Assembly: GCA_001179505.1 (NCBI GenBank)
Contig: CDMY01000468.1
Location: forward strand, 6,649-70,648
Length of the DNA stretch: 64,000 nt
Source of the DNA: Vitrella brassicaformis CCMP3155
Taxonomy: Eukaryota > Protista > Chromerida
Direction: 5' to 3'
How positions within the stretch are numbered: the stretch's first letter is position 1; every line of letters begins with the position of its first letter. Shown piece after piece: positions 28,535 through 64,000 of the stretch. The notes beneath the pieces were generated by a model. That model was not told the origin of the DNA and ran no database searches. It saw nothing but the letters and a program-made list of their open reading frames with translations. Both the position numbers and the translations under genes were made by a program.

Positions 28535-30632
28535 ACCTTTGCACTATGTCCAGAGGGCTTTGGCTGCTTGGACGGGTCCGTCGCGCCCTTGCCGGCCAAG
28601 GAGATCCTAAAAGCAGAGCAGCCACACAAGGACATTGAGCCAAGAGTACAAGAGGACAAAAGACAGGCATGGATACGCTGCCGGAGGTTGCAAGCCACGG
28701 CCGTGTCGGTGGCGAAGGCATGAGAGAGTGGGGCACCTGAACGCCGGCACAGCGAACAGAATGGCACGGGTGCATGTCAGTTGACACAGGCATGTACTGT
28801 CAGTGTGAACGCATACCAGCTCGCAATTTGCCGGCTCCTCATTCGTCACCACAGACACGTGCACTGCACATGCACCAGAAATAAATGCATACAGGCAGAG
28901 AGTCAATAGGGAAGTGATATGCGCCTCCAGGCGGCCATGTGTGGCGTTCTTCTGACGAAAGAGTGCTTGCCTGTGCTCTCGCCGTCGAACTGTGAGATGA
29001 TGATGTAGGCGATGAAGGGATGGCCGAAGGACGTCAGCAACAGCTGCTTTCACTTGCGCTCAAGTCCTTGGAATCCCACCACGGCCGTCGTGCCCTTCAC
29101 TTTGATGTGGGGAGACGAGCACATCAGCCTGGCCAACACACCGGGACGCCGGCTGAACGAAAAGCACACAAGACAAAAGTGCCACTGACTGTTGCTAGAG
29201 AGACGACGTGAAAAAGAAGCGACTCGTCGTGGCTGGCTCTCCCTCACAGTTGGAAGGGTTCTTTCTTAGTTCCACCCCTTCGTCATCGCCGACCGACAGG
29301 ATGGTGCTGGTCAGGAGGGAGGTGAACGAAACCTCGTCGAACTTGTCCTCCGTCTCCCACTCCCCTTCTCCCTTGTGGCCTCCAATCTGTGCCGCACAGG
29401 GGGGTCCTCAGCACGCTGCGAGATGGGGCGGGTGGGNNNNNNNNNNNNNNNNNNNNNNNNNNNNNNNNNNNNNNNNNNNNNNNNNNNNNNNNNNNNNNNN
29501 NNNNNNNNNNNNNNNNNNNNNNNNNNNNNNNNNNNNNNNNNNNNNNNNNNNNNNNNNNNNNNNNNNNNNNNNNNNNNNNNNNNNNNNNNNNNNNNNNNNN
29601 NNNNNNNNNNNNNNNNNNNNNNNNNNNNNNNNNNNNNNNNNNNNNNNNNNNNNNNNNNNNNNNNNNNNNNNNNNNNNNNNNNNNNNNNNNNNNNNNNNNN
29701 NNNNNNNNNNNNNNNNNNNNNNNNNNNNNNNNNNNNAGGGGGGAGGGGGGAGTGGGAGGGGGGGAAGGGGAGCGACAGGTGGATGTCGAAGGCCGACTCA
29801 TCTCGAATGGCACGCACAGCGCCCGGCGGCCCGTCGAACAGCTCGAATGTCCCGGCACCGTCAGGGAAGGCGACATGGGGACCGACCACTCCTCACTGGG
29901 CCAGCGCACGGGGAAGAGGCGAAGAAGCCTGACAGACAGACAGACAGACCACCCCCACCCCAAGCAGATTGAAGCCCTCCACGTCCCGGCCAATATATGA
30001 TGTTCCCCTTTCCTCCCTCCCTCCCTCCCTCTCCTTCCTTTCTCGCACGTCCCTCACAGCACAGGCACGAACATATATACCTGCTTGGTGAAGTGCTTCT
30101 GCAGGTCCGCCCGGGTGAGTCTGATGGGCAGCTGACAGAGGCGGCGCTGAGCCGCCAACCGTGATAGGGGCCTCGCATGCTCGGGTGGTAGCCCTCGACT
30201 TGGCTGGTACTGCGCACGTTGACCTTCTTGGTAATGAAGACGCCTGTCCCTCGATAGTTGACGGCCTCTCTGTGGCGGACAGAGATAGAGAAGACACACA
30301 GCCACACGTGCAGGCACACGTCGGTATGCCTTTCGCTCGTCTACAGCATACCCGTCCATATACATGGGCCTGCGGGGGTCGTCGCTCAGGCAGTCGTTCC
30401 ACATGTGGGCAAGCAGTCGTTCGCAAGCCGGTCCTATAGTCCTCTGCTCAAGCCGTATTTTGAGGGGTTCCTCAATGCCTTGTCGCAAAATTTCGGCATC
30501 AGCCTTAAAGTGACCGTCGACCCTGGACAAACGACGAAGGACGGCGATTTCCACGACATCCCTCCCGCGCTTGGCCGCGGCACGACGGCTGGTTTTCGTG
30601 CCGAACGGATAATCCTGCTGAGGACCCAGCAT
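28535..30632 (-). pseudogene. Fragmentary hypothetical coding sequence spanning an assembly gap
   Basis: Protein-like segments (EILRQGIEEPLKIRLEQRTIGPACERLLAHMW, DKFDEVSFTSLLTSTILSV, LLLTSFGHPFIAYIIISQF) cannot be joined without stops or frame changes. Confidence 0.3.
29437..29736. other. Assembly gap (300 N) flanked by G-runs
   Basis: N run. Confidence 1.
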
Positions 30633-32914: not shown

Positions 32915-35900
32915 TCAAATCACACCCACACACCCGGCAGCAGACGCGTGCTGCCTTGAGGGTGGGGTGGGTGAATGAGTCAGTACGTCAGCTGCTGCTG
33001 CTGCTGCTGCCGGTCTCCACCCAGCTTCACGGGCAACGCGATAGCTGACCCTGCACACACCACACACACACACGTCATACACAAGTGTGCACTTGACACA
33101 CACAGGTGCGTCCACCTACCGGTGCTGTTGGTGGTGACGTCACTCGTCTTGGCAAGATCGGCACTCGCCAACTCCTTGGCACGTTTCCTGCGCAGGAAGA
33201 CACACACACACAAATGTACCGTGCGGGTGCGCCTTCCTTATATTCTGTCACTCGTGTGCGGTGCAGGTGAGGTGCATCGTTTGCTCACTCACAGTTTGGT
33301 CTGCTTGTAGTACTTGTAGAGGGGGGTCTTCCATGCCTTCGGGCGCATCGAACAGACACACACATCACGTCCAGTCCATGTGTGTGTAGCCGTGCGTGGC
33401 GTAGGGGGATGGGCGAATGGGTGTGGCTCGGTTAGCTTACGTAATAGGGGACCTCTGGCTTGACCTCAGATGGCTGCAAACACACACCAACACGCCCCAC
33501 ACCAAAGAGGAAGATAGCGATTCGCATGTGTGTGCGTGTGAGAGAGACAGATGGGCGCGTACCAGCACTGGATGGACAGTGGACCGAAACCCCTTTCTGA
33601 AGGTCCGCTTCCTTTCCTCTGAACACACACGACACGACACACCCATACAAAGCCATTCCATCACGCGTCTGTGTCTGTGGAGGTGCCTGTGCTGTGTATG
33701 TCCTTCCTCGACCTTTGATCTTGGCAATGCGCTCTTTGTGCTCTTTGAATATCGGCCGAAACCACCTGCACACACACATGGCATGGCCAGGTCATGCGGC
33801 AAGGGGTGCGCATCGCAGGTGTGAATGGGATGGTTGTGGTGTGTACTTGCCTGTCTGGCCAGTGCACCCAATGGCTGCCGGGCGCCACGAGAAGGCTGTA
33901 CTTCTTGCCTGCAGACAGACAGGGCACACACACACACAAAGGCACCCACACAGGCCTCGCTGTGTTGTGGCAATGATGCATTGCGTCCACACGCAGCGCA
34001 GACACTCACCGGTAGCGTTGGCCATTGTGCGCCGCGACTGTATCATGTCCAATGCGCGACGAATAGCCCTGCCACCACACACACACACGGATGCATGGGA
34101 TGCGCAAGTGAGTGAGTGAGTGCCATTCACTCGACCGACCGTATACGAGTGAACCACTTGCTCTCATGCTTGGGAAACGTCACACGGCAATTGTCGAGAC
34201 CTGCAGGGACGACGTGGGCATCCATACATCGATCCATCCATCCATCCGACAACGGTATGCATCAGTGTGAGCGTACCGATCAAGTAGAGAATTGGCAGGA
34301 ACTTTCTGTTGGCCCGAATGCCCCTCCCTGCATGTGGATGCATTCATGGAGCACACAGAGGTGGTTGGTGTGCGTGAGGTGCGTGAGGTGGGTGAGGTGG
34401 GTGAGGTACCTATCGGCCGGCCAATGATCTTGAAGTGGCTGCCGTATTCCCTTCCTGCACGCACACACACACGACACACACACACACGCACAGAGAGAGA
34501 GAGAGAGGGAGAGGATCATTGACAGTGCTGACACCCTTCCTGACGGGCTGACCGTATACAGGTGTGTTGAGTGTGCGTGCTCTGTCCAGATCGACAAACT
34601 CCATATGCTGCAACGCCTTCAGCGCCGCGTCAGCACGCGCCTGCCGTCCAGGAAGTGCACCACACACACACACACGTGTAAGTGACTCGTCCGCGTGAAC
34701 ACAGACAGAGAGCGAGAAGCGGACCTCTTTTGGCGACTCACCAAACCCCACACCAAAGCCCACCAAACCGCGGCCATTGCCTATGGACACACCACACAGA
34801 TATGACTCCTGTGGACCCATAAGCTCGGGGGGNNNNNNNNNNNNNNNNNNNNNNNNNNNNNNNNNNNNNNNNNNNNNNNNNNNNNNNNNNNNNNNNNNNN
34901 NNNNNNNNNNNNNNNNNNNNNNNNNNNNNNNNNNNNNNNNNNNNNNNNNNNNNNNNNNNNNNNNNNNNNNNNNNNNNNNNNNNNNNNNNNNNNNNNNNNN
35001 NNNNNNNNNNNNNNNNNNNNNNNNNNNNNNNNNNNNNNNNNNNNNNNNNNNNNNNNNNNNNNNNNNNNNNNNNNNNNNNNNNNNNNNNNNNNNNNNNNNN
35101 NNNNNNNNNNNNNNNNNNNNNNNNNNNNNNNNGGGGGGGCGGCTCACTCACCCACACAGACAATCGACCTGTAGTAATAGAGACGCCCATCTGCCAGAAC
35201 ACACAGACGCATCCACTCCACCAAAGTGGGTGGGCTGCGCATTCATGCGCGGCGCGTGTCGGGACCTGAGCACATGCTGCCCATGCGTGCGATGTGCAGC
35301 TGTGTCTGCCGCAGCTCGTCTATCTTGAGCAGCGGGTCGATGCCCTCCTGCACGCGCCGCACCGAACCAGACACACAGGGAAAGGAAGGGCACACAGCTA
35401 TCCGTCCATCCATCCATCCAGTCACCCAACCCAGGTAGGTGTTTGGCTGGCTGACCTGTTCTCTAACGTATCGGTCTCGCTTGGCGTCATAGAGAGCATT
35501 GGCCGGCTTGCGCCTGCACATATACCCTCACACGCGAATGGGTGATGGATGCCCGGACGAGTGACTGCGCCTTCGTATCTCTCTCTCTCTCTCTCTGTCT
35601 GTCCGTCTACTGGGTGTGTGCACACATCTGCAGCGTCACCATACCATGTCCACTTGACGATCTCTCCGTCCTGTTCGACCCATTCCAGAGGGCCGGCCGT
35701 CTTGACGTGAGACATCTCGTGATCGACCTAAACACACACACACAAATGATGCACCCATACACACAAAGATGATGATGCACCCACCGGCCAATGGACTCGC
35801 TCACCAGGACTTCCATAGGGGTCTTGCCATGCCGCTTGCGAAACGCTTCATCAACCTAAGACGCACACACACACACACACACAGGCACATGCCTTATGCG

Positions 35901-48163: not shown

Positions 48164-49799
48164 ATCTGTACAGAGCCATCAGTTCATCTGCACGTACAAA
48201 CACGGCAAGAGGAGGCATCTGAGCACACCCATGGCAACGAAATGCACCATGCATTCATCCCTACACTTCATCCACACACCACACCATCACCACACCCAAG
48301 AGACATGACGCACAAGGCCACGCTCATCTGTATTTACCTGACGGAGTCGCTTTGGGGGAAAAGAAGGCGCCTGGGCACTTGGCTGACGCCAGGCAGGCGC
48401 CAGCCGCTCCGCAGAAGGCAGGGCGCCAGCAAAGGAGGCCTCGCCCGGGGCACGGCGGTGGAGGAAAAAAGTGGCGGATGAAATCCGGACGAGTTGCGAA
48501 GGGTATAGGGAGATGCGGCGGACAACACAAGCCAACAACCAGCCGAAAAGAAAAAGAAACGGAGGAGATGTGGCCGAAACAAGGCTGGAAAGCCGAACGC
48601 GCTCGAAAACGAAAGAAACTGCTGCAAGTTCGTAAATCATTGTTGTCTCCGTCTCAGAGCGCTCGCAAAAATATATCTCGCCGCATTTGATTCTCGCTTT
48701 CTGCGGACAACGGGAGGCCAGTACTGGCAGACAGAGGCAGAGACGATGGCTGCTGCCAGAAGAAGCCATACAGATTGCGTGCGAGATCCGCTCACTTTTC
48801 TTTTTCGTCGGTTTGGTCGGATAGAGGTCTGACGTCTGAGATGCGATGCGCCTGTGTGGGTGCAGAGGCTCTTCATTTGACCTCTGGTGGATCCTCAGCG
48901 AAGCTCCAAGTATCCCACCAGCCAGCCTTGTGGACCGGAACGGCTTGCATTTCTTGTGTGTTGACCTTTGCAGTGGATGGATTTCACGCCATGTCTGCCG
49001 CACACACACGAACACACTGTTACTGTTACTGCACTGCTTAGCAGCTTGGCAGAAAATCTCGTCCCTCTACCAAACAATCAGACAGTCAAGACAGACAGAC
49101 AGCAGACAGGCAATCCATCAGTGTGTGTACGCAGACAGACAGCCAGGCGGACAGAGCAAAAACAGAACACACAACACAACACATGACACTACACACATCA
49201 CAGCACATCACAGCACAAATCACATGCATGGACCTCATGAAGGGCACAAACCACACATTCAATCACAATCACACCAACGTGCACGCAGCCACTCAGACGT
49301 CGTCATATCATTGGATGGGGAGGGGAGGGGAGCGGGGAAGAACCACTCCACTACCCTCCCCAGCCCACCCCACCAGGGCCCTCTGCTGGCCGTGGTCGTG
49401 GCTGTGGCTGTGTGCTGCTGGCTCTCGGCATGTGTGTGGCCGCTGACGGGGGGCGGGACGTCCTCCGGGGCGTCTAGCTGGTCTGAGGGCGAGAGGAGGT
49501 AGCATGAGGGCGGGAAGCACGCCTTGGAGGACGTGACGGGCGCCTCCAACTGATCAACAGGTACAGAGACATACAGCGAGAACGACTGCAGATTGTCGCG
49601 TGTCTGTCTGACGGTATGGTCGCAAGTTCTGCTGCTCACCGTTTGTGACACGTCGAGTTTGCCGAGGATGGTGTTGCTCACCTGGAGTGGGGGCTCGGCG
49701 GTGGCTGGGTCGGGCTGCGGCACCACGCCGGTGGAGCTGGCCAGGTCGGCCGGCAGGTCGTAGTCGATGTCAGGATTGACAAAGCTCGCCACCTCGATC

Positions 49800-52230
49800 T
49801 CATTCTGACCAGACACACACATGCACGGAACCAGTGGGATCCACTCTTGCGGCCCGTCCCGTCCACCCTCCCCCCCTCTCCCTTCTCATCCCCCCTCTCA
49901 CCAGCCTGTCGCTCGCGCCCTCATGGTCTGCCGCACGGGACACCATCCCCACGCCCATCCCCCCGGTCACCTCTCCCGGCTTCTCACTCGGCATCGTCTG
50001 CCCTATCAGCTCGGCGATGATGATCCCCAACGCACACTCGTCGAGCTCCACCCGCCGCAGCTGCAGCAGCGCGAAAATGGCAGGCGTGAAGCCCGCCAGG
50101 TCGAGGGCCAGCTCGATGTTGGGCCGCTCGCGATCGAAGAGCCGCAGCGCGTAGGCGGCCTGGCCGGCCGCCCACGGCGACGAGGGCGTGGGGCCGCCGT
50201 GGTGGCCGCTGGCGGTGCCCGGGATGGCTGCGGGGCTGGTGGTGTAGAGCTGCTCGTGCGCCTGCTGCTTGGTCATGGGATCGTAGTGGTGCGCGGCCCG
50301 CCACATGACCTGTGCGATGGAGAGTCGGATCTCTGCACGCAGCGAGGGCTGCTGGGGCAGCGGGGCCTTCTCGAGGTAGAGCCGGATGAGCGTGTGGACG
50401 AAGCAGCTGTTGATGGTGCTCTCGAATTCGACCAGCTTGCTTTCCAACAGCAGGCCCAGGATCTGGCCCAGCTTGTGCTCGATGTCCTCGTTGAGCAACG
50501 CACTCGCACCTTCGGGCGTGAAGTGCCCGATGAAGATGCTCAGCGTCGTCAGGGCCTGCCGCAGCGGGAGCGGCTCCGCGAGGGCCTCGACCGACGGCTG
50601 CACGCAGGCCGCGTACTCGGAGAGCGGCGACAGGGTCAGGTCGTGGTCGAAGTCCCTCTCAAGCGTCATGTCGAGCGTCATGTCAGGACGGCTGCCCAGC
50701 AGACGGCCGATCACACGCAACGCTGAACACAGGTGAGAGAGAGAGAGAGAGGGAGATGTGTGTGTGTGTGTGTGTGTGAGTTGGTCATATCTACCGAGTG
50801 GCAGGTGTCCGCAGAGGTCTCCAGTTCTGGCGGCGGATTCGACGTCCACGTTGGGGCAGAGCTGCCGCAGCAGCCGGACAGAGTTGGTGCGGTCCAGCTC
50901 ACCCAGGTGGATGTGCCTCGGAACCAACGGACACTTCTCGGGCAAATCTGCACACACACACACACACACACAGATGAGACGCATGCAAATGCGTGTTATC
51001 CCTGTGTCAGTAGGTTTGTCTATCTGTCTGACCGCCAGGTTTGATGATTCGTGGCGATGTGAGCAGGGTCTTGAGGTGCGGGCATGAGTCCGGCATACAC
51101 CGCACACACACAGACCCTTGGGGCGCACCGTTATCGAAAACGATGAGCCTCTTGCCGCTGGCGGTTCCCGGGGTGGCTGCGATGGGACCGGCTGGTTGCG
51201 GTGGCGCCTGTTGCGTGTCGAGCATGTGCTGTGTGGGTGTGCGGAAAAGATCGGCGATGCCGCCCCCGATGTTGACGAGCGAGCGGATGGGCGTTATGCC
51301 GGACAGACAACGGAGCACCTGAGACCTGACGACATGCAGACAGACAGACAGACAAGGAGACATCGCAGAAAGCACCACTTCACGCCACATATTTATACCA
51401 GTCGACGCACAGCCCCGTCGGGAGTAATGACAAGAGCACCTCCGAGTGGTCGGCAGCCGCCGGCAGCAACACAAACTTGTTCGACTGTCAATCAAAAGAC
51501 ACATACAACGCATCACATCACAATGATCACAATGAGGCCATGCCCCCTCCTCCCTCCCTCCCTCGCACACACGTGTGTGTGAGAGGTGTGTACTGCACAT
51601 ACCTCTTGGTGGGGCGAGGGGATCTCCGCCGAGTGTCTGACGAGCCAGTTGATGGAGTTGCCGACCAACAACGAGTCGTAGAAGGCGTAGACGAACTTGC
51701 GGGCGGCCGTGTCAGCCACGTGCAGAGCGCCCGCATCCAAACTGACCGGCCGATCCACACACACACACACACACGACTGCTGTCTATGTCTTGTTTCCGT
51801 CGTGTGGCGGTGGTGGTGATTACAATGATGCGGAGGCGATGGCTCGCGAGTTGCAGCTGCTGAGCACCACGCCCTGGCATGACGGGCCGCGCTGAACAAA
51901 ACTCCACGGGCCCGGAGACCTGACACCCAACACACCAACACACAACACAACACACACATGGGGCCCATTCTGACAACTCACTCTATCTCACCTGAACAGG
52001 TCGCAGAGTGAGTCGGCCTGCAGTTCGGCAGCACGTGGGTCGCCCTCGGCCACATCCTCGTTGATCTCGGCAGCACGCGGGTCGCCCTCACACGGGGCCG
52101 TGTTGAGCCAATCCAACCAGTTGACCACCTGACAGCAGTGGTGGAGATGCACAGATGGACGGACGGACGAATGGACGGCGCAGAGGTGTGTGTTTGTGCG
52201 TGTGTGTGAACCTGGGAGAGTGTCTCTTGT
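49800..52230 (-). CDS. Most complete NLR-like copy: W2 tail, C-terminal CHAT half, ATG2-like fragment, NB-ARC (Walker B onward), winged helix, 'LRLFDRERPNI' helical region
   Basis: VVLSSCNS; AARKFVYAFYDSLL; KFVLLP; PIRSLVNIGGGIADL; RLIVFDN; CPHLKTLLTS; LGELDRTNSVRLL; CGHLPLALRVIGRLL; LSIFIGHF; VHTLIRLY; LFDRERPNI. Confidence 0.65.
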
Positions 52231-52234
52231 TTGC

Positions 52235-52534
52235 NNNNNNNNNNNNNNNNNNNNNNNNNNNNNNNNNNNNNNNNNNNNNNNNNNNNNNNNNNNNNNNNNN
52301 NNNNNNNNNNNNNNNNNNNNNNNNNNNNNNNNNNNNNNNNNNNNNNNNNNNNNNNNNNNNNNNNNNNNNNNNNNNNNNNNNNNNNNNNNNNNNNNNNNNN
52401 NNNNNNNNNNNNNNNNNNNNNNNNNNNNNNNNNNNNNNNNNNNNNNNNNNNNNNNNNNNNNNNNNNNNNNNNNNNNNNNNNNNNNNNNNNNNNNNNNNNN
52501 NNNNNNNNNNNNNNNNNNNNNNNNNNNNNNNNNN
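52235..52534. other. Assembly gap (300 N) at a junction between tandem copies
   Basis: N run. Confidence 1.
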
Positions 52535-53389
52535 GGGGTGATCTCGGCAGAAGGGGACTTGACGGGCGCCTCCAACTGATCAACAGGTACACAGACATAC
52601 AGCGAGAACGACTGCAGATTGTCGCGTGTCTGTCTGACGGTATGGCCGCAAGTTCTGCTGCTCACCGTTTGTGACACGTCGAGTTTGCCGAGGATGCTGT
52701 TGCTCAGCTGGAATGGGTGTTCGGTGGTGGCTGGGTCGGGCTGCGGCACCGCGCCGCTCGAGCTGGCCAGGGCGGCCGGCAGGTCGTAGTCGATGTCAGG
52801 ATTGACCTCGGAGAGTGGCGACAGGGTCAGGTCGTGGTCGGAGTCCCTCTCAGGCAATGCCGCCACCGATTCGGGCGGCATGTCAGGACGGCTGCCCAGC
52901 AGACGGCCAATCACACGCAACGCTGACCACAGGTGAGAGAGAGAGGGAGATGGGTGTGTGTGTGTGTGTGTGTTGGTTATATCTACCGAGTGGCAGGGTC
53001 TCCAGTTCTGGCGGCGGGCTGGACGTCCATGTTGGGGCAGAGCTGCCGCAGCAGCCGGACAGAGTTGGTGCGGTCCAGCTCACCCAGGTGGATGTGCTTC
53101 GGAACCAACGGACACTTCTCGGACAAATCTGCACACACACACACACAGATGAGACGCATGCAGACGCGTGTTATCCCGGACGGCCATGTGCTCAGCTCAC
53201 CGGTAGTCGACAGAGATGAGGAGTCCGTCCATGAAAAAGTGCTGGATGAACACCGGCAGGGGGGACGACAGCACAGAAGCGCCACCGCCACCGCCACGGC
53301 CACCACGAGCACCCGCAGCGCTGGTAGGCAACCCGCCCCCACTCCCCGACTCCTCAGAGGCTGTCCTGCTTGGTCCCTGCTCGTCGCCG

Positions 53390-56300
53390 TCATCGGGCCT
53401 GGACATCGGGCCTGGACTCCTGGCCCGCAGACGCCCTCTTCTCGACCATTTGTGGCATCCTGCCGTGCTCGAGGAAGGCGGCGATGAACTCGAAGGTGTT
53501 CTGGTCGGTGGTGATGGGCAGAGGCATCACACGGACGTCCACACGGGACTCGTTGGGACCCCAGCCGCTGTCAGAGGAGGTGTTGGGACGCTCGTCAAGC
53601 ACCACTGACACCATGTCCACCGACGGCCCTGTGCTGGCGCCGGGGCTGGTGGTGCTGGCGGTGCCCGGGATGGCTGCGGGGCTGGCGGTGTAGAGCTGCT
53701 CGTGCGCCTGCTGCTTGGTGATGAGATCGTAGTGGTGCGCGGCCCGCCACATGACCTGTGCGATGTAGAGTCGGATCTCTGCACGCAGCGAGAGCTGCTG
53801 GGGCAGCGGGGCCTTCTTGAGGTAGATCCGGATGAGTGTGTGGACGAAGTAGCTGTTGATGGTGCTCTCGAACAGCTGATGATGGTGCTCGGAGTCCTCG
53901 TTGAGCAACGTACTCGCACCTTCGAGCGTCGTCAGGGCCTGCCGCAGCGGGAGCGGCTCCGCGAGGGCCTCGACCGACGGCTGCACGCAGGCCGCGGACT
54001 CGGAGAGCGGCGACAGAGTCAGGTCGTGGTCGGAGTCCCTCTCAAGCGTCATGTCAGGACGGCTGCCCAGCAGACGGCCAATCACACGCACCGCTGAATG
54101 AACACACGTGAGACAGAGAGAGGGAGATGTGTGTGTGTGTGTGTGTGTTGGCTATATCTACCGAGTGGCAGGTGTCCGCAGAGGTCTCCAGTTCTGGCGG
54201 CGGATTCGACGTCGATGTTGGGGCAGAGCTGCCGCAGCAGCCGGACAGAGTTGGTGCGGTCCAGCTCACCCAGGTGGATGTGCTTCGGAACCAACGGACA
54301 CTTCTCGGGCAAATCTGCACACACAGATGAGACGGCATGCAAAGGCGTGTTATTCCTGTGTCAGTAGGTTTGTCTGTCCGGCTGACCGGCAGGTTTGATG
54401 ATTCGTGGCGATGTGAGCAGGGTCTTGAGGTGCGGGCATGAGTCCGGCACACACCACACACACACAGACCCTTGGGGCGCACCGTTGTCGAAAACGATGA
54501 GCCTCTTGCCGCTGGCGGTGCCCGGGGTGGCTGCGATGGGACCGACTGGTTGCGGTGGCGCCTGTTGCGTCTCGAGCATGTGCTGTGTGGGTGTGCGGAA
54601 AAGATCGGCGATGCTGCCCCCGATGTTGACGAGCGAGCGGATGGGCGTTATGCCGGACAGACAACGGAGCACCTGAGACCTGACGACATGCAGACAGACA
54701 GACAGACAGACAGACAAGGAGACATCGCATAAAGCACCACTTGACGCCACATATTTATACCAGTCGACGCACAGCCCCGTCGGGAGTGATGACAAGAGCA
54801 CCTCCGAGTGGTCGGCAGCCGCCGGCAGCAACACAAACTTGTTCGACTGTCAATCAAAAGACACATACAAGGCATCACATCACCATCACAATGAGCATGC
54901 CCCCTCCTCCCTCCCTCCCTCGCACACANNNNNNNNNNNNNNNNNNNNNNNNNNNNNNNNNNNNNNNNNNNNNNNNNNNNNNNNNNNNNNNNNNNNNNNN
55001 NNNNNNNNNNNNNNNNNNNNNNNNNNNNNNNNNNNNNNNNNNNNNNNNNNNNNNNNNNNNNNNNNNNNNNNNNNNNNNNNNNNNNNNNNNNNNNNNNNNN
55101 NNNNNNNNNNNNNNNNNNNNNNNNNNNNNNNNNNNNNNNNNNNNNNNNNNNNNNNNNNNNNNNNNNNNNNNNNNNNNNNNNNNNNNNNNNNNNNNNNNNN
55201 NNNNNNNNNNNNNNNNNNNNNNNNNNNNACTGCACATACCTCTTGGTGGGGCGAGGGGATCTCCGCCGAGTGTCTGACGAGCCAGTTGATGGAGTTGCCG
55301 ACCAACAACGAGTCGTAGAAGGCGTAGACGAACTTGCGGGCGGCCGTGTCAGCCACGTGCAGAGCGCCCGCATCCAAACTGACCGGCCGATCCACACACA
55401 CACACACACACGACTGCTGTCTATGTCTTGTTTCCGTCGTGTGGCGGTGGTGGTGATTACAATGATGCGGAGGCGATGGCTCGCGAGTTGCAGCTGCTGA
55501 GCACCACGCCCTGGCATGACGGGCCGCGCTGAACAAAACTCCACGGGCCCGGAGACCTGACACCCAACACACCAACACACAACACAACACACACATGGGG
55601 CCCATTCTGACAACTCACTCTATCTCACCTGAACAGGTCGCAGAGTGAGTCGGCCTGCAGTTCGGCAGCACGTGGGTCGCCCTCGGCCACATCCTCGTTG
55701 ATCTCGGCAGCACGCGGGTCGCCCTCACACGGGGCCGTGTTGAGCCAATCCAACCAGTTGACCACCTGACAGCAGTGGTGGAGATGCACAGATGGACGGA
55801 CGGACGAATGGACGGCGCAGAGGTGTGTGTTTGTGCGTGTGTGTGAACCTGGGAGAGTGTCTCTTGTTTGCCTGGTGTCTTGTCCTGCTCGTCCTCCCGC
55901 CACTGGACACACAGAGGGGCCCGTGAAAGCAGTCAGCCAGTGCATCCTCTCCGTGTGTGTCAGTCAGTCATGTGTGTTGGGCTACCTACCCAGGTGAAGT
56001 ACTGTTCCTCGATGATGTCCTGCGTGTAGAGGGCGTCGAAGACGGCCTCGACCAAAGCCCACAAGGGCGATATGCGGACGTGACGCAACTCTATTATGTC
56101 ACACACAATGGACACACACAATGGACAGAGACACACACACATAGCGGAGAGATGGACGGACGTGCACTGCATGGCTCCTGGTCACGTCAGTTTGTTACCG
56201 AGTGTGCCCTTCTGAATGGCAAACAGGAACCGTAGCTTGTGCCGGTGGATGCAAGACGTCTGAATGAACACAAGGTTGCGCGTGCACATCCATGCCATCT

Positions 56301-56555
56301 GTGTCTGTCCCTCCCTCCCTCCCTGACTGACTGACTGATTGACCTGGAAGATGTTCTCGAGTGTGGGCTTGATTTTGGCGACGAGGGCACTGACCGCCTC
56401 GAGGCTCTCCAAACTCTCATCAGCCACACCAGCTGCAGTGCACCCCACCACACATCACATCAACCAATCGCCGTATGTCGGTGTCAGTCAGAGATGCGCA
56501 CCATCGATGGCTTTGAGCAGCTCCTCGGCGATGGTGGCCGACGGCAACACCTGAC
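53390..56555 (-). CDS. Second NLR-like copy with full W2 domain, WHD deletions and a different C-terminus
   Basis: W2-end to CHAT to ATG2-like to NB-ARC exons join in frame by GT-AG splicing (phases checked by hand). The winged-helix exon lacks SIFIGHFTP and LGLLLESKLV. It ends with an unrelated tail containing TDQNTFEFIAAFLEHGRMP. Confidence 0.55.
54929..55228. other. Assembly gap (300 N) inside an intron of a tandem copy
   Basis: N run. Confidence 1.
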
Positions 56556-57209
56556 GACATGCAGACAGACAGACAGAAGACAGACAAGGAGACCATCGCA
56601 TAAAGCACCACTTGACGCCACATATTTATACCAGTCGACGCACAGCCCCGTCGGGAGTGATGACAAGAGCACCTCCGAGTGGTCGGCAGCCGCCGGCAGC
56701 AACACAAACTTGTTCGACTGTCAATCAAAAGACACATACAAGGCATCACATCACCATCACAATGAGCATGCCCCCTCCTCCCTCCCTCCCTCGCACACAC
56801 GTGTGTCTGAGAGGTGTGCTGTCCATACCTCTTGGTGGGGCGAGGGGATCTCCGCCGAGTGTCTGACGAGCCAGTTGATGGAGTTGCCGACCAACAACGA
56901 GTGGTAGAAGGCGTAGGCGAACTTGCGGGCGGCCGTGTCAGCCACGTGCAGAGCGCCCGCATCCAAACTGACCGGCCGATCCACACACACACACACACAC
57001 ACACGACTGCTGTCTATGTCTTGTTTCCGTCGTGTGGCGGTGGTGGTGATTACAATGCGGAGGCGACGGCTCGCGAGTCGCAGCTGCTGAGCACCACGCA
57101 CTGGCATGACGTGCCGCGCTGAACAAAACTCCACGGGCCCGGCGACCTGACACCAACACACCGACACACAACACACATGAGGCCCATTCTGACAGCTCAC
57201 TCTATCTCA

Positions 57210-60200
57210 CCTGAACAGGTCGCAGAGTGAGTCGGCAGTTCGGCAGCAAGTGGGTCGCCCTCGGCCACATCCTCGTTGATCTCGGCAGCACGCGGGTCGC
57301 CCTCACACGGGGCCGTCTTGAGCCAATCCAACCAGTTGACCACCTGACAGCAGTGGTGGATGCACAGATGGACGGACGAACGGACACCGCAGAGGTGTGC
57401 GCGTGTGCGTGTGTGTGAACCTGGGAGAGTGTCTCTTGTTTGCCCGGTGTCTTGTCCTGCTCGTGCTCCCGCCACTGCACACACAGAGGGGCCCGTGAAA
57501 GCAGTCAGCCAGTGGATCCTCTCCGTGTGTGTCAGTCATGTGTGTGTTAGGCTACCTACCCAGGTGAAATACTGTTCCTCGATGATGTCCTGCGTGTAGA
57601 GGGCGTCGAAGACGGCCTCGACCAAAGCCCACGAGGGCGATATGCGGACGTGACGCAACTCTATTATGTCACAATGGACACACACAATGGACAGAGACAT
57701 ACACACATAGCGGAGAGATGGACGTGCACTGCACTGACTGCATGGTGTGGCTACAGGTTACCGAGTGTGCCCTTCTGAATGGCGAAGAGGAACCGTAGCT
57801 TGTGGCGGTGGATGCAAGACGTCTGAATGAACACAAGGTTGCGCGTGCACATCCATGCCATCTGTGTCTGTCCCTCCCTCCCTCCCTGACTGACTGACTG
57901 ATTGACCTGGAAGATGTTCTCGAGTGTGGGCTTGATTTTGGCGACGAGGGCACTGACCGCCTCGGGGCTCTCCAAACTCTCATCAGCCACACCAGCTGCA
58001 GTGCACCCCACCACACATCAGAGAGTGGGTCGCCGTCGGTGTCACTCAGAGATGCGCACCATCGATGGCTTTGAGCAGCTCCTCGGCGATGGTGGCCGAC
58101 GGCAACACCTGGTGCCAATCAGACTGACACACGAAACACACACAGACAGACAGACAGACAGACGAGTTGGTTGCTCAGCTCAGGTGAACTCAACGAGCAG
58201 TGCGTGTGTGTGTGGTTGCTCAGCTCAGGTGAACTCAACGAGCAGTGCGTGTGTGTGTGGTCTACCTCTTGCAGGAGCTGGTGCGTCTCGTTGGCCAGCT
58301 TCTCGGCAGTGAGCTCGTCGGTGAGGCACCGGCTGACGAGGCCCGCCAGCTTGGACATCCGCTCGACTGAAGCGCGTGTGCTCTCCTGGTCCACACCACA
58401 CACACGCACACACAACACGTGTCGTAGGTATGTCGAGTTGGGTGGGCGGGTGGGGGAGGGGGCGTACTGTACCTGCTCCTCACGGCGCTTCTGTTCCTCC
58501 TCCCGCTGCTCACGGCGCTTCTGTTCCTCCTCCTCCTCTTGGCGCTTCCTCTCCTGCTCCTCACTGCAGACACGTTCGTATTCACCACACACAGACAGAC
58601 AGACAGACGAGTGCATCGCATTCATTGGAGTGTATGTGTGCGCATTTGGCCCCCACATCGTGTGTGTACACCTACCGCTGTTTCTCCTTGATGCGGCTCC
58701 GCTCCTCCTCCTTCTCGGTGAGCGGACGGTGGCCGCCACCGGCCTGATAGCCACCACACACACATACACAGACACACACACACACAAGTGGGAGGGGGCG
58801 TTGGAGGGGCTGGGGGCTGTCTGCTGACTTTCTTGGGCGGGGCGTGAGTCTTGTTCTTGCCCTCGTCGCCCTTCTCCATCCTCGCCAGGGCCTGTCGGAC
58901 CAACACACACTCATCGATGCAGCCTTCTAACCGCTTGTGCTTCGTGTGGTGCGAGTGTGCTGACCGCTTGGATCCTGTCATAGACGGCTTTGCCCGTGTC
59001 CTTCTTGCCTTTGTTCTTGGCCTTCTTCTTCCCTGGCGCCCTCTCTGCCGTCTCCTCCTTCTCGGTGGTGGGTGTGCTGGTGCTGGGGGCCTTGGCGTGC
59101 ACCGGCGGCGGCGAGAGGGGAGCGGCCGCAGGGGTGGGAGCAGCAGGGGCGGGCGGGGGCACAGTGGACGGCTTGGAGGGCCGGACGGTGGGCGCAGGGA
59201 GGGGTGTGGTGTCGCCAGCAGCCGCCGGTGCGGCGATGTCGGTGCTGTCGTCCAGCGGGGAGGTGATGTCCTCGGTGTCCTTGTCAACCGCACTCGAGGG
59301 GCTCGACGGCACCACCGGGTTGTCGATGGAACGGGGCAGCGACACTGCACACAGCACACACCAAGCAGACACACATGAACGAATGCGTGTGAGCGTGTCT
59401 CTGTGTGGGTGGGTGGTCGACATCATCGGCGCGTACCTTCACGCTCCTTCTTCTGAGTCGGTGGCACGTCGGGACGCTTTGCGGGTGCGGGCGGGGCAGG
59501 CTTGCCTCTGTTGGTGGTCGGGGGGGTCTCTGGCTTCGCTGGCGGCGCTGGCGGACCCTTTGGTGGGGACGGGCGGGGCGGGAGCTGGGGACGAGTGCTG
59601 CGCTTGGGGGGCCGGCTGCTCGTGTCCAGTGGTGGGAAGTTGTCTGTGCCGCTCGGGGGGCTGACGGGCGGGGGCGATGGGCGCGACATCAGCGGGCCAG
59701 CGGGGCTGACGGTGCGGCCGCCGCTGGGGCCGGTGAGGGGCGGCGTTGGCGACTGGGAGTCGAAGGCTGCCGTGAAGTAGGCGTAGAGGTCGTTGTGCCT
59801 GCAGATGGGGCACTCCGTCACGAACACACGAGTGTTCTGAACCAATCAAAAACAACAAAGCGACAAAGAGGGACGCGTGTGTGTGTGTTTCAGTCAGTGT
59901 CTGTCTGTCTGTCGGTCGGTCTGCTTCGCTGTGTGTGTGTCCTTACGTCCTGGAGTAGGGTCGTCCTGCGATTGTAGGTGAGGTGGTCGTTCGCACAGGT
60001 GCTGCACACGAGCTGCACCCATCCATCCATCAATCGACAGACAACTCGTGGATGAAGAGTGAGGTCATGCACGCCTTTGTGTGGGTGGGAAAGTGGCTGC
60101 ATACTTTTTGCAGCACGGCAGTCTGACCAGCTCCTCGCGACATGTGCAGATGGGGCACTGCATGGTCTTCTGCCCCGTGCCGTTGCCGCCCGCACCCCCG

Positions 60201-61957
60201 GCCGGCGAGTGGAAGCACACGGGGCACTCCAGGCCATCAACCGACTCCTGCACACAACACAAGTGGGGCCACCAGACACACCACACCCTCCCATGTGTGT
60301 GTGAGAATGCGTGTGTGTGTGTGTGTGGTAGGTTTGGTTCTTACGTGCTCTTTCCGCCCGAGCCTCTTCTTGCAGGTGACGCACAATCGGTGGAAGCAGA
60401 TCAACATGTCCTGTGGGACACACACCCCGAGGAGATAGATAGATGACACACCGTTCGTTCGACCATTGACGCGTGGGGTGGTCGGTTGTGTCCCCAGGTG
60501 ACGTACCAGTGCTCGCAGCGAGGTGCGGGCCCCACAGTCGCTACACTCTGCCTGTAACGCACTCATCTCCTTGAACGGACGCGTCTGGGACCTGTCGGCC
60601 GACATGGCACCACAGACAGACAGGCAGCAATGTGTATGCCGTGTGCACCGCGTGTGCCGTGTCCGTGTGCGAGTGGGGACGTATGTACGTGGCGTAGAGG
60701 AGGTCGTAGTGGCCTGGACGGAAGAGAAGGACGACAGGAGTAGTGCCGGGCATCATGACCGACCCCTCGCGGTACTCGTACAGCGGACACAGAGCGTCGG
60801 TGTTGTCCTGACACACACACAGAGAGAGAGGTACAGGAGTGAGAAGTCAAGCCAGAGAGGAGAGGTGCGTTGCTGTCGCTTTGTTTTGTCACCCACCAGC
60901 TGCACGATATGGATCTTGTCGTTGAGCACTATCGAGGCGACGGCAAACACCAACCCACCCTCCGCCTCACGACCACACACACACACACACACAGATAGAC
61001 CAACACACCCTCAGCCCCTCAGGCACGATGGATGCATCAGTCCCTCCCTCCCTCCGTCCCTTCTCCGTCGCTCACCCATCTCCATGACCTCCATCTCCAC
61101 GTACTGCTCCACACTCTGGAAAAACTCCTCCTCAGCAGCCTGACCCTGCTGTCCCTGCTGCTGTGTGGCGCCCGAGCTGATGCTCTTGCCGCCACAGGCC
61201 TCGTGTGGTGTGGGTGAGTCGGCGGGGGACGATGCGTCACCTGTGCTGGGGCTGGGGCTGGAGGTGGCGGGGATGGGGTAGGTCGAGACGTACTCGGAGA
61301 TGGTCAGCACACCCTCCTCACCGGGCGTCACAGACTCGTCGGCGTGCTCCAACATGTACTTGCGCACCAGCCGACGGAGCATCTTGACTGAATCAATGAA
61401 GCAGAGGAGGGACAAGACAGGACAGCTCACATGACACGACGCGATTGTGCTGATTGTGCTGTGTGGTGTAGGTATGTGTGGTCAGCTACACACGTACCTA
61501 TGGCAAGGTCCAGGTCAGCGTCGGTCATGAGTTGCCAGTAGAGCTCACTGCCGCTGAGGGACTGCAGACGGCCGTACTGCACCGCCAGGTCATCGTCCGC
61601 CAGCACATCGGCAGGAATGTCAAAGTCGTACGCGGCCGTCTCGCGCAACTCGAGCAGGGCGAAACCCAGCGCACGATAGAAGCAGTTCCTTGCACCACAT
61701 AAACAACACACCACACACAGGCAATCAACGCCCCGACCCATGACCCTTTTCGTGGCCGCACCATCGCCCCGGACGCGTCTGAAGCGGTCGTAGGTCTCGC
61801 AGAGTTTGTCGATCTTTTTCTGGTGGTTCTTGCTGGCCTTGAAGTCACGCTTGAGCACCTCCAGCGCCAATGGGACCGACAGGGGATAGCGCCTGTCCCG
61901 CCAGTCGGTCGGCGTAGTGGGAGCATTGACGCCATGGGAGCGGTTAAGGTCGTTCAT
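57210..61957 (-). CDS. Otubain-type OTU deubiquitinase, RING-like fingers, Pro-rich/coiled-coil linker, eIF4G2/DAP5-like W2 domain; multi-exon, possibly disabled
   Basis: RRVRGDG/NCFYRALGF and LLFRPGHYDLLY (otubain Cys and His motifs) are spliced in frame to CSDC..CFHRLCVTC..CPVC (RING). Then CPIC..CSTC..CPIC; a PAPAAP region; an EEQKRRE coiled coil; and AVFDALYTQDIIEEQYFTWWREHEQDKTPGKQETLSQVVNWLDWLKTA (W2). Confidence 0.72.
58168..58260. repeat. Exact 2x ~45-bp tandem duplication in an intron
   Basis: ggttgctcagctcaggtgaactcaacgagcagtgcgtgtgtgtgt occurs twice in tandem. Confidence 0.85.
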
Positions 61958-62879: not shown

Positions 62880-64000
62880 AACCCGAAACCCTGGAAACAC
62901 CGCTGCACGGTGCTGCGGAGGGTGGTTGTGACGATGGTGGTGGTCATCTGCCATCGACGAGGTGGGCATTGATGTTCTCCAGATCTGCAGATGATGCACC
63001 GACAGCCGTGATGATGTGCTCCCGTGAGTCTCCCGTGAGGTCTCAACATACTGGCGGCATGCTACTGAGGAGGGTAACTGACAGGCACTGCCACTGGCTG
63101 GCTGGCTGCTCATCTCACCTCCCTGCCATCGATTGGATGGCTGGTGCTGTCTGTCTGTCGTTGGTGCTGTTTGGTGCAGGTACTTCCCCTTGCTGTGGAC
63201 GGCAGTCCAGGACGGAGGCCTCGCGAGGCTGCAGGCACGCACACGCACAGCATCGCGGGGGGTGCATTTGTTCTTCATCTGTTCGTATGTGTGTGGGGGT
63301 GGTGCGTCACAACTTCAGGTGTACTTCGTCGGCGGCGGAGGCGCCCGGTGAATGACCGGTAGACCGCCACGGGCAACTAGAGGGTGCATTTGAGCCTTCC
63401 GTGTCATTGAGTGCGATGACTGTAGGCGTGTTGCCGTCCAAGGGGCTCGGGGCACCCTCCCGGACGATGGCAATTGGACGATGGGGGTGGTCATCGGCCA
63501 TCGGGGGGGTGGCCATTTCATGTTGCAGATGCTACTCCGACAGCCGTGATTATGTGCAGCATTGAGGTAGGCTGCCAGTTGGCTGCACGCACACACGTAG
63601 CATTGCGGGGGTACATTCCTTTGGTGTATCTATCAACAGATGATATCATCTGTTCGTGTGTGTGGTGCCTCAGGACTTTAGCTTTGCTTCGTCGGCGGCC
63701 GATGAGGCGCCTCGGCGGAGGGAAGCCCTGCATGAGGTATACCGCTACGGGCAACTGGAGGGTGCATTTGAGCCTTCCGTGTCATTGAGGCTGGGTGCGA
63801 TGGCTGCAGGTGTGCTGCCGTCCACTGCAAGGGGCTCGTGGCCCCCTGATTCATGCTCTCCAGCTGATGTGGCGGTCACGTGGCGGTGAGGTAGGCCGCA
63901 GGCACTGCACGCTGCACGCACGAGCACAGCATCGCGGGGGGTGCATTCCTTCATCATCTGTTCGTCTGTGTATGTCTGTCGTGCGTCGTAACTTCAGGTT
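62880..64000. repeat. Degenerate tandem array, unit ~330-380 bp, about 3 copies, running off the window
   Basis: cagcatcgcggggggtgcatt..catctgttcgt..aacttcaggt at ~63250, ~63600 and ~63928; acgggcaact(a/g)gagggtgcatttgagccttccgtgtcattgag at ~63370 and ~63745; cgacagccgtgat at ~63000 and ~63540. Confidence 0.8.

What the first reader, a model, noticed from the sequence alone, without database searches (positions are those of the whole stretch)
49259..61957. Mosaic NLR-like immune locus: ubiquitin-editing head (OTU+RING), eIF4G-type W2, half-CHAT, ATG2 fragment, NB-ARC/WHD
Seen in sequence: on one strand, in order, are otubain motifs, RING cysteines, a DAP5-like W2 domain, the Cys-containing half of a CHAT domain (VVLSSCxS, ARKFxxAFY, KFVLLP), an ATG2-like peptide and STAND/NB-ARC motifs (LIVFDN, LLTS, CGHLPLALRVIG, winged helix, LFDRERPNI). 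In the middle copy I checked exon phases from the W2 tail to the NB-ARC helical exon, and they join in frame by GT-AG splicing. Established knowledge: CHAT-STAND proteins are innate-immune/cell-death effectors, and plant NLRs acquire integrated host-protein domains as pathogen decoys. Inference: this may be a protist NLR locus that captures pieces of virus-targeted housekeeping proteins (translation initiation, autophagy) next to ubiquitin-editing domains. It could instead be a graveyard of shuffled gene fragments. I do not know of this architecture being described.
Basis: partly seen in the sequence, partly recalled or inferred. Interest (0 to 1): 0.9.

Follow-up and report, generated by a model that had tools for sequence, protein, structure and literature searches.

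The report
Decaying STAND gene array beside deubiquitinase gene
The "mosaic immune receptor" is a public computer-made gene model in the alga Vitrella brassicaformis that strings together a normal deubiquitinase-RING gene, a fragment copied from another gene, and a poorly assembled tandem array of broken copies of a W2-(half CHAT)-STAND gene; only the W2-to-STAND fusion is new.

Summary
They all lie on the minus strand of a Vitrella brassicaformis CCMP3155 scaffold. The whole stretch is already a public 1681-aa predicted protein (P0003, exons 61957 to 53393).

Confirmed:
- An otubain domain with intact catalytic residues.
- A C3HC4 RING, conserved in OTUB-RING proteins of other protists.
- An eIF4G-type W2 domain.
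- The cysteine half of a CHAT domain, shown through CHAT-NACHT-TPR homologues.
- STAND motifs.

The ATG2 match is only 35 residues long and below Pfam's threshold.

The single-protein reading does not hold.
- OTUB-RING relatives are stand-alone proteins of 385-700 aa.
- The linker exon is 78% identical to part of a Vitrella USP gene and has almost no RNA cover.
- The cDNA contigs start at 58865, 14 nt after a good ATG.

From there runs a tandem array of about four units, 92-100% alike, bordered by gaps. Every unit is damaged:
- None has the CHAT histidine half.
- None has TPRs.
- The window has no P-loop exon.
- There are 4-nt and 11-nt frameshifts and deletions in the winged helix.

The cDNAs confirm that W2 is spliced to CHAT. 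They also carry a P-loop exon that the assembly lacks, so the assembly is incomplete here. Other windows of this scan noted the same stretch.

Verdict: mostly a set of gene fragments plus an annotation fusion. Interest is modest.

The parts
59423..61957 (-). OTUB-like deubiquitinase plus C3HC4 RING gene. The OTU exons run 61957-60688 and the RING ligands lie in exons 60590-60128. It probably ends at the stop codon at 59423-59425.
   Evidence: Peptidase_C65 scores 55.5 bits and OTUB1 is the best PDB match. The 8 RING ligands are invariant in 7 sequences. Homologues are stand-alone proteins of 385-700 aa. Exon map of P0003. ORF 59423..59845 ends in a stop codon.
58965..59345 (-). Proline-rich 'linker' exon of the public model. 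It is a duplicated fragment of the disordered tail of a Vitrella USP gene and is probably a pseudo-exon.
   Evidence: P0003 residues 528-627 are 78% identical to P0158 residues 495-602. The two RNA runs give almost no depth over 58629-59828, while the DNA run X1 gives 23-103.
57211..58879 (-). Unit C, first part: a candidate start ATG at 58879-58877, Lys/Glu-rich exons and an eIF4G-type W2 domain. The cDNA contigs start at 58865.
   Evidence: cDNA contigs L001-L003 map here at 98.5-100% identity with GT-AG introns. W2 scores 41.5 bits. PDB hits are eIF4G2 and eIF4G1. The ATG context is shown. An RNA contig of X13 confirms introns 57661-57761 and 57826-57916.
56630..57146 (-). Unit C, cysteine half of CHAT (VVLSSC ... 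KFVLLP). It is out of frame with W2 when the cDNA-supported donor at 57210 is used. It comes into frame only with the donor 10 nt downstream, which the public model uses. The unit is cut off after this exon.
   Evidence: Reading frames of the cDNAs. Unit C lacks 4 nt that unit B' has; both candidate donors are visible. Alignment to CHAT-NACHT-TPR homologues.
53390..56586 (-). Unit B'/B. W2 from its second listed exon (56553-55628). Half-CHAT (55555-54760, with gap 2 in an intron). A foreign ATG2-like exon in place of the P-loop (54678-54484). Then Walker B, GHLPL-ALRVIG and a winged helix with internal deletions (54315-53393).
   Evidence: Exon map of P0003. Self-BLAST. The family HMM aligns only the flanks, not the ATG2-like part. 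The winged-helix deletions relative to unit A are visible in the ORFs. X9 RNA contig over 53232-53683.
54929..55228 (.). Assembly gap 2, inside an intron. By homology it is about 20 nt of GT-rich sequence.
   Evidence: Units A and C are continuous across the equivalent point with 20-24 nt. DNA contigs there show variants that the assembly lacks.
52555..53177 (-). Partial unit. The GLPL exon has an 11-nt deletion that shifts the frame. The ALRVIG exon is fused directly to the short tail, so the winged helix is deleted.
   Evidence: Self-BLAST. The cDNAs match 53129-52987 at 99.3% and 52923-52663 at 97.3%, and their ORF ends at GDPATRVACDWPSAGQPS. Spliced RNA contigs of X9 and X13.
52235..52534 (.). 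Assembly gap 1, between the partial unit and unit A. Its content and length are unknown. The missing W2 exons of unit A would lie here.
   Evidence: Gap list. The 643 bp next to it is identical to the flank of gap 2.
48681..52234 (-). Unit A. Last W2 exon. Half-CHAT (51923-51397). ATG2-like exon in place of the P-loop (about 51330-51129). Walker B. GHLPL (50948-50796). The longest ALRVIG/winged-helix exon (50726-49902). A short non-TPR tail (49780-49637). 3' end (49550-48681).
   Evidence: Frame listing. ATG2_CAD scores 26.4 bits. The winged-helix region resembles P0005 residues 706-855. X9 RNA contigs cover 49902-50551 with no mismatch, and pieces end at 49902 and 49550, which look like exon ends. 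The cDNA 3' end maps here at 96.7%.

Best explanation
The stretch holds at least two transcription units plus debris. An automatic gene prediction fused them into one protein (P0003, 1681 aa, Vitrella brassicaformis CCMP3155).

(1) 61957 to about 59423 is an intact otubain-type deubiquitinase with a C3HC4 RING. This gene type is conserved in other protists as a stand-alone protein. It probably works as an ordinary ubiquitin-editing enzyme.

(2) 59345-58965 is a copied fragment of a USP gene's disordered tail. It is probably not expressed.

(3) From about 58879 downstream lies a tandem array of about four units, produced by repeated segmental duplication. The founder was a CHAT-NACHT-TPR STAND gene. 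It had already lost its N-terminal (histidine) CHAT half and had an eIF4G-type W2 domain spliced on in its place.

The array is transcribed and spliced, but every unit seen is crippled in its own way:
- C: a 4-nt deletion at the W2/CHAT junction, and truncation.
- B and A: the roughly 100-aa P-loop segment is replaced by unrelated sequence with a short ATG2-like stretch.
- B: deletions in the winged helix.
- The partial unit and the cDNA copy: an 11-nt frameshift in GLPL and no winged helix.
- All units: no TPR sensor.

The array is therefore most likely a birth-and-death cluster of decaying STAND paralogues. If any part is still useful, it is probably the W2 part.

Shown: the domains, the unit structure, the lesions, the splice junctions in the cDNAs and the identity of the public model.
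Inferred: that the genes are separate, that the units do not function, and the order of events.
For: - P0003 is the window's own model, and its exons map exactly to 61957-53393.
- OTUB-RING homologues of 385-700 aa cover 80-86% of P0003:1-420, and all 8 RING ligands are invariant.
- The last RING exon ends in a stop codon if it is not spliced.
- The linker exon is 78% identical to USP protein P0158. It has almost no RNA cover.
- Three cDNA contigs all start at 58865, 14 nt after an ATG in a good context.
- Unit structure and the identical gap flanks.
- Homologues are CHAT+NACHT+TPR or SAM-CHAT-NACHT-TPR.
- The locus lacks the SGHG half, and units A and B lack the P-loop. No P-loop or histidine half was found anywhere in the 64 kb.
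- The ATG2-like insert has no similarity to the P-loop segment or to the rest of the window.
- Frameshifts.
- The winged-helix region is homologous to P0005 only up to about residue 855 of 1520, so the TPR part is missing.
- dN/dS is about 2 for the CHAT exons (1 synonymous, 6 non-synonymous) against 0.28 for W2 (5 and 5, p about 0.05).
- The assembly was made from short reads with velvet, SSPACE, GapFiller and IMAGE, and genes were predicted with Augustus (PMC4501334).
Against: - Exons are better conserved between units than introns (about 97% against 91-95%). W2 to CHAT is in frame in two units. Both hint at some constraint.
- Units A and B are transcribed.
- Augustus used RNA-seq intron hints that I could not see. 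Those hints may support the downstream donor in unit C and the RING-to-linker junction.
- The W2 reading frame of the cDNAs is open to their 5' end, so an upstream continuation is not excluded.
- The RNA runs hold few contigs, and their libraries may favour 3' ends, so missing cover over the linker is weak evidence.
- The cDNA contigs may be chimeras of paralogous units.
- The assembly is unreliable here, so an intact unit could be hidden in gap 1 or elsewhere.
Confidence: 0.6

Rival explanations
1. The public model is right. One 1681-aa protein carries OTU, RING, linker, two W2/half-CHAT modules, the ATG2-like piece and a STAND tail, and it acts as a mosaic immune receptor with integrated decoys.
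For: All exons lie on one strand and can be joined into an open frame with GT-AG-type sites. Augustus used RNA-seq intron hints. The 5' end of the cDNA ORF is open.
Against: - The model keeps an in-frame intron inside the OTU active-site region (between GDG and NCFYRA) and crosses an assembly gap.
- At two places it avoids the donor that the cDNAs use: the W2-CHAT junction of unit C and the C-to-B' junction.
- With the natural donor, the C-to-B' junction is out of frame (my reading of the sequences).
- OTUB-RING relatives are stand-alone proteins.
- No near-identical transcript-derived ORF of 231-735 aa or 925-2940 aa joining these parts was found in the protein collection.
- There is no P-loop, no CHAT histidine and no sensor repeats.
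Confidence: 0.07
2. The array encodes working but non-canonical proteins: W2 + cysteine-half CHAT + a P-loop-less STAND scaffold. They would act without ATPase or protease activity, for example as adaptors, dominant-negative regulators of the intact SAM-CHAT-NACHT-TPR paralogues, or W2 decoys.
For: W2 to CHAT is in frame in units A and B'. Exons are more conserved than introns. W2 has dN/dS 0.28. Units A and B are transcribed, and RNA contigs end at what look like exon boundaries. The ATG2-like exon is in frame with both neighbouring exons.
Against: The CHAT exons show no constraint (1 synonymous, 6 non-synonymous changes). Unit B has lost core winged-helix segments. The units differ by frameshifts and large deletions. 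No RNA contig was seen across the ATG2-like junction. No start codon or full open frame could be shown for unit A because gap 1 cuts it.
Confidence: 0.17
3. Much of the damage is an assembly artefact. The real locus holds one or more intact W2-(half)CHAT-NACHT genes, like the cDNA copy that has a P-loop. Short-read assembly and gap filling scrambled near-identical units.
For: - cDNA positions 1160-1478 (the P-loop) are absent from the window. Flanking exons match at 100% on one side and only 94-97% on the other.
- 643 bp are identical at two gap edges.
- DNA-run contigs show bases and junctions the assembly lacks: 56402, 51677, 51691 and the sequence beyond 56553.
- cDNA isoform L001 has a 21-nt insert that no window unit has.
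- The assembly method.
Against: The P-loop cDNA itself has the GLPL frameshift, lacks the winged helix, and is out of frame with W2. So the best copy seen is also broken. The ATG2-like replacement is present in two diverged units (92% identity across that segment), so it is a real sequence and not a mis-join. DNA contigs match most of units A and B without mismatch.
Confidence: 0.16

Closest known systems
CHAT-NACHT-TPR STAND proteins (bacterial 'tetratricopeptide repeat protein' type, e.g. HXU31953.1) and the eukaryotic SAM-CHAT-NACHT-TPR transcripts P0004/P0005
   Same: 34-41% identity across the cysteine part of CHAT, the KFLLLP linker, and the NACHT core: Walker A in the cDNA copy, Walker B, and LLTSR. 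The winged-helix region is weakly alike.
   Different: The locus lacks the histidine half of CHAT and all TPRs. The window copies lack Walker A. A W2 domain sits where the SAM or the CHAT N-terminus would be.
Plant NLRs with integrated domains (NLR-ID 'integrated decoys')
   Same: A host-protein domain (W2 of the eIF4G type) is fused to a STAND module, inside a tandem cluster of paralogues.
   Different: The NLR chassis here is not intact. There is no evidence of pairing with a helper, of pathogen targeting of W2, or of selection on the fusion. The NTPase is NACHT-like, not the plant NB-ARC clade.
Otubain (OTUB1, peptidase C65) with a C-terminal RING, as in the protist proteins P0152-P0157
   Same: The catalytic Cys and His motifs, and the C3HC4 RING directly after the GHY[DE]LLY motif. 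The ligands are invariant.
   Different: Some relatives carry an A20 zinc finger (PF01754). None carries W2, CHAT or NACHT among its precomputed Pfam domains.
W2 (HEAT-3) domain of eIF4G1 and eIF4G2/DAP5
   Same: The alignment covers about 150 residues of the C-terminal HEAT domain, including the aromatic/acidic boxes. Pfam W2 scores above its cut-off.
   Different: There are no MIF4G or MA3 domains. It is preceded by a Lys/Glu-rich stretch and followed by CHAT exons.

Membership tests
STAND NTPase (NACHT / NB-ARC) | Walker A P-loop (GxxGxGK[ST]) | tested here: not met
   It is absent from all window units. tblastn of P0002 finds nothing for residues of about 100-190. The family HMM skips that region. 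It is present (GAPGIGKST) only in cDNA contigs L001-L003, whose P-loop segment is not in the window.
STAND NTPase (NACHT / NB-ARC) | Walker B and the downstream core, with a profile hit above threshold | tested here: inconclusive
   LIVFDN is present in units A and B. Pfam NACHT scores 31.7 bits (cut-off 26.7) on the cDNA ORF only. NB-ARC scores 14 bits. There is no NACHT or NB-ARC hit on the window ORFs or on P0003.
STAND NTPase (NACHT / NB-ARC) | Helical domain with the GLPL-type motif, plus a winged helix | tested here: inconclusive
   GHLPL-ALRVIG is present in units A and B. Unit A's winged-helix region aligns to P0005 residues 706-855 (E 3e-4). Unit B has deletions there. The partial unit and the cDNA have an 11-nt frameshift in GLPL.
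NLR-type receptor (tripartite) | C-terminal repeat sensor (TPR, LRR or WD40) | tested here: not met
   No repeat family was found in P0003 or in unit A's tail. Homologues have TPR_12 and related repeats. Unit A ends about 50 residues after the region that aligns to P0005 residue 855.
CHAT (caspase-like protease) | Catalytic histidine (SGHG region) | tested here: not met
   It is absent from the alignment with homologues and from the whole window by tblastn.
CHAT (caspase-like protease) | Catalytic cysteine segment, homologous to the C-terminal part of CHAT | tested here: met
   VVLSSC aligns with VSACHS of homologues whose Pfam CHAT hit covers that part. There is no direct Pfam CHAT hit on the locus.
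Otubain (Peptidase_C65) | Profile hit above threshold and the catalytic Asp/Cys/His | tested here: met
   55.5 bits against a cut-off of 24.3. GDG|NCFYRA and PGHYDLLY are present.
RING finger (C3HC4) | Eight zinc ligands with canonical spacing | tested here: met
   The pattern C-x2-C-x13-C-x-H-x2-C-x2-C-x16-C-x2-C is invariant in 7 aligned sequences. The Pfam RING models are not significant.
W2 domain (eIF4G/eIF5/eIF2B-epsilon) | Profile hit above threshold | tested here: met
   41.5 and 75.4 bits against a cut-off of 30. PDB hits are eIF4G2 and eIF4G1.
ATG2 | Profile hit reaching the family threshold, or similarity to a solved ATG2 structure | tested here: not met
   Only 32-35 residues match. 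Scores are 26.4 and 19.4 bits against a cut-off of 50. There is no PDB match at E up to 10.
NLR with integrated decoy | A working NLR chassis carrying the integrated domain, with evidence that the domain's parent protein is a pathogen target | not testable with these tools
   The chassis features above fail. No data exist on pathogens of Vitrella or on targeting of W2.

The most novel reading that the evidence does not exclude
Vitrella has, at this locus or in the part the assembly lost, a translated W2-(Cys-half CHAT)-NACHT protein. An eIF4G-type W2 domain would replace the usual SAM/CHAT-N effector head of a CHAT-NACHT-TPR family. The protein would be a STAND switch coupled to, or guarding, the translation-initiation machinery. 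The broken units in the window would be its birth-and-death relatives.
Probability: 0.12. Interest if true: 0.7.

Novelty: new variant of a known kind. Interest (0 to 1): 0.3.

Why it matters
The main use is as a caution. A striking multi-domain "immune receptor" in a public proteome turns out to be a prediction that fuses separate things across a poorly assembled tandem repeat.

Two points have some wider interest.

First, chromerid algae carry CHAT-NACHT-TPR STAND genes of the bacterial type. This locus shows them being duplicated, shuffled and decaying, as NLR clusters do in plants and animals.

Second, the cDNAs really do splice a translation-factor W2 domain onto a STAND gene. I found no cluster or paper with this combination. 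If an intact copy exists, it would be a testable case of domain integration into a STAND protein outside plants.

The exon shared with a USP gene also shows that segmental exon shuffling is active in this genome.

Tried and rejected
1. The ATG2-like peptide as a degenerate P-loop. I rejected this. A family HMM built from the up to 148 homologues that passed E 1e-10 aligns only the flanks. Sensitive blastn and tblastx against the cDNA P-loop segment find nothing.

2. The ATG2 peptide against solved structures: no hit. The protein-atlas search of that part gave only weak NB-ARC/NACHT-like leads with scores of about 0.6.

3. Transcripts joining RING to W2.
- Two exact-pattern scans of metagenome contigs found nothing. 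The second was a positive control taken from L001, so the JGI transcriptome sample is not in that collection.
- Protein searches with P0003:1-420 and with region 1-700 found no near-identical transcript ORF.
- So the question stays open.

4. Laying Logan contigs on the locus. The (CAGA)n and (CA)n introns attract thousands of unrelated contigs. The joint tables are mostly noise, and only a few listed pieces were usable.

5. Pfam on raw window ORFs gave no CHAT or NB-ARC hit. The STAND and CHAT calls rest on the cDNA ORF and the homologues.

6. Closing gap 2 with an X1 contig. The contig is a mosaic of unit-type variants. It shows there are extra variants. It does not prove closure.

7. I ran no structure prediction. 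It would not separate the rival explanations.
Full report
**Source and layout**

The window is GC-rich (about 57%) and intron-rich. All features of the finding lie on the minus strand. A profile search with a cDNA-derived ORF returned a 1681-aa protein, P0003. A later search named it 'unnamed protein product [Vitrella brassicaformis CCMP3155]', on a 70,648-nt contig. Exact matching of P0003 to the three minus-strand frames places its 34 exons from 61957 down to 53393. Its precomputed Pfam domains are C65, W2 and ATG2_CAD. The genome paper describes a short-read assembly made with velvet, SSPACE, GapFiller and IMAGE, and Augustus gene prediction with RNA-seq intron hints (PMC4501334).

**Gaps and assembly**

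Self-BLAST shows a heterogeneous tandem array:
- unit C, 58142-56541;
- unit B'/B, 56586-53390;
- a partial unit, 53177-52555;
- unit A, 52234-49529.

Units are 87-95% identical (99% over one short flank), with one exception. The stretch 51592-52234, which ends at gap 1, is 100% identical over 643 bp to 55229-55871, which starts at gap 2. That is what gap-filling in a repeat would produce.

Gap 2 lies in the intron between the second CHAT exon and the KFVLLP exon. Units A and C are continuous there with 20-24 nt of GT-rich sequence. So no coding sequence or frame should be lost, but this is an inference from homology.

Gap 1 is unresolved. It cuts off the W2 exons of unit A.

DNA-run contigs carry bases and junctions that are not in the assembly: 56402, 51677, 51691 and the sequence beyond 56553. 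So there are more unit variants than were assembled.

**The domains**

- Otubain is solid: Peptidase_C65 at 55.5 bits, OTUB1 in the PDB, and the Cys and His motifs.
- Pfam does not find the RING. An alignment with six protist OTUB proteins shows eight invariant C3HC4 ligands straight after the OTU domain.
- W2 is solid and of the eIF4G type.
- The STAND part has 6573 relatives at E up to 0.001. The closest are SAM-CHAT-NACHT-TPR transcripts (40-41% identity). Next come many CHAT-NACHT-TPR proteins, mostly from metagenomes; one cluster member is from a Thermoanaerobaculia MAG.
- In the alignment the locus starts just before the catalytic cysteine (VVLSSC against VSACHS). It lacks the roughly 110 residues that carry SGHG. 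So 'half-CHAT' is right, and it cannot be an active protease.
- Pfam classes the NTPase as NACHT (31.7 bits), not NB-ARC (14 bits).

**What the cDNAs show**

A protein search found two ORFs (P0001, P0002) on three intronless 2.5-2.9-kb contigs, L001-L003, from a JGI-hosted transcriptome sample. These map to exons of unit C from 58865 to 56829 at 98.5-100% identity, with GT-AG introns. This proves that the W2 exons are spliced to the CHAT exons.

The contigs then continue as follows:
- a KFVLLP exon that is only 94% identical to any window copy;
- 319 nt encoding RFIVIVGAPGIGKST and what follows, with no match anywhere in the window;
- the exons of the partial unit, at 97-99%;
- a 3' end that is 96.7% identical to 49550-48681.

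So either the assembly lacks a unit or the contigs are chimeras of paralogues. In either case a copy with a P-loop exists and is expressed.

That copy is itself broken. W2 and CHAT are in different frames, because unit C lacks 4 nt that units A and B' have. An 11-nt deletion in the GLPL motif ends the ORF, and the winged helix is missing. The public model restores the frame in unit C by using a donor 10 nt further on. At the C-to-B' junction it also avoids the natural donor.

**The window units**

In units A and B the exon after KFVLLP is an in-frame 180-200-nt exon. It runs into GKRLIVFDN but replaces about 100 residues: the linker, Walker A and the segment after it. The replacement is unrelated to the family and to the cDNA segment. 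It carries the 35-residue ATG2_CAD match. That match is statistically not trivial (E 1.9e-6), but it is far below the family cut-off and has no PDB support. I treat it as a possible captured fragment of unknown source.

Unit B also lost two winged-helix segments and diverges after AAIPGTAS. Unit A has the best winged-helix region. It is homologous to P0005 residues 706-855, including the 'E.PN...LDL.G' motif. It ends soon after that, without TPRs.

No unit has Walker A, the CHAT histidine or sensor repeats.

**Expression and selection**

- RNA-run contigs cover unit A's large exon (49902-50551) without mismatch. Pieces end at 49902 and 49550, which look like exon ends.
- They also cover unit B (53232-53683, running past the annotated stop) and the partial unit's exons, with spliced flanks.
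- Exons are about 97% identical between units, and introns 91-95%.
- dN/dS is 0.28 for W2 (5 synonymous, 5 non-synonymous, p about 0.05). It is about 2 for the CHAT exons (1 and 6).
- The counts are small. They suggest that if anything is constrained, it is W2.

**One gene or several**

Points for separate genes:
- OTUB-RING homologues are stand-alone proteins of 385-700 aa. None has W2, CHAT or NACHT among its listed Pfam domains.
- The last RING exon runs into a stop codon at 59423.
- The next model exon is 78% identical to the tail of a Vitrella USP protein.
- The region 58629-59828 has almost no RNA cover in two RNA runs.
- All three cDNA contigs begin at 58865, 14 nt after an ATG in an AGGATGG context.

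Points against:
- The cDNA frame is open at its 5' end.
- RNA cover is thin overall.
- I could not see the RNA-seq hints that Augustus used.

I found no transcript that joins RING to W2. The tools could not exclude one.

**Conclusion**

- The headline interpretation, one NLR-like receptor with a ubiquitin-editing head and integrated decoys, is not supported.
- The best reading is an ordinary OTUB-RING gene, a copied USP fragment, and a transcribed, decaying tandem array. The array derives from a CHAT-NACHT-TPR paralogue that acquired a W2 domain before the duplications.
- The W2-STAND fusion is new. I found no cluster or paper with it. There is no evidence that it makes a working protein.
- Other first-stage notes of this scan cover the same stretch. 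They also report intact SAM-CHAT-STAND-TPR genes elsewhere in this genome.

Noticed in passing
window 58965-59345 (P0003 residues 528-627) and P0158: An exon-sized block is 78% identical to the disordered tail of a Vitrella USP deubiquitinase on another scaffold. The two proteins also begin alike (MNDLNRSHGV against MNDRNRSAGV). This suggests exon-level segmental shuffling between two deubiquitinase genes.
   Followed up: partly
window 61499-61957 (first exon of P0003): The public model keeps an in-frame intron between GDG and NCFYRA in the otubain active-site region. There may also be unused RING-region exons (VRLPCCKK, LVCSTCANDH...). The deposited protein is mis-annotated.
   Followed up: partly
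L001:1005-1025 compared with L003: cDNA isoform L001/P0001 has a 21-nt insert (KQSFKHA) in the CHAT exon. It matches the family consensus (SAFKHAQ) and is absent from every window unit. This is evidence for a further, more ancestral-looking unit that was not assembled.
   Followed up: partly
window 56402, 51677, 51691 and the sequence beyond 56553: DNA-run contigs (X1, and X5 at 51677 and 51691) show only bases that differ from the assembly at these sites. One X1 contig continues past 56553 with the full SDWH exon start instead of the assembled C-to-B' junction.
   Followed up: partly
window 51178-51375, 52960-53157, 58429-58628, 59829-60028, 61029-61228: Introns here are full of (CAGA)n, (CA)n and (GA)n runs. 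These attract thousands of unrelated contigs and inflate depth 10- to 100-fold. Depth at these places means nothing.
   Followed up: no
window 29437-29736 and 34833-35132: Two more 300-N assembly gaps lie in the window, outside the finding.
   Followed up: no
window 63235-63320 and 63914-63999; 63333-63440 and 63713-63824: Short direct repeats (82-85% identical) lie about 380 and 680 bp apart upstream of the OTU gene. Their nature is unknown.
   Followed up: no
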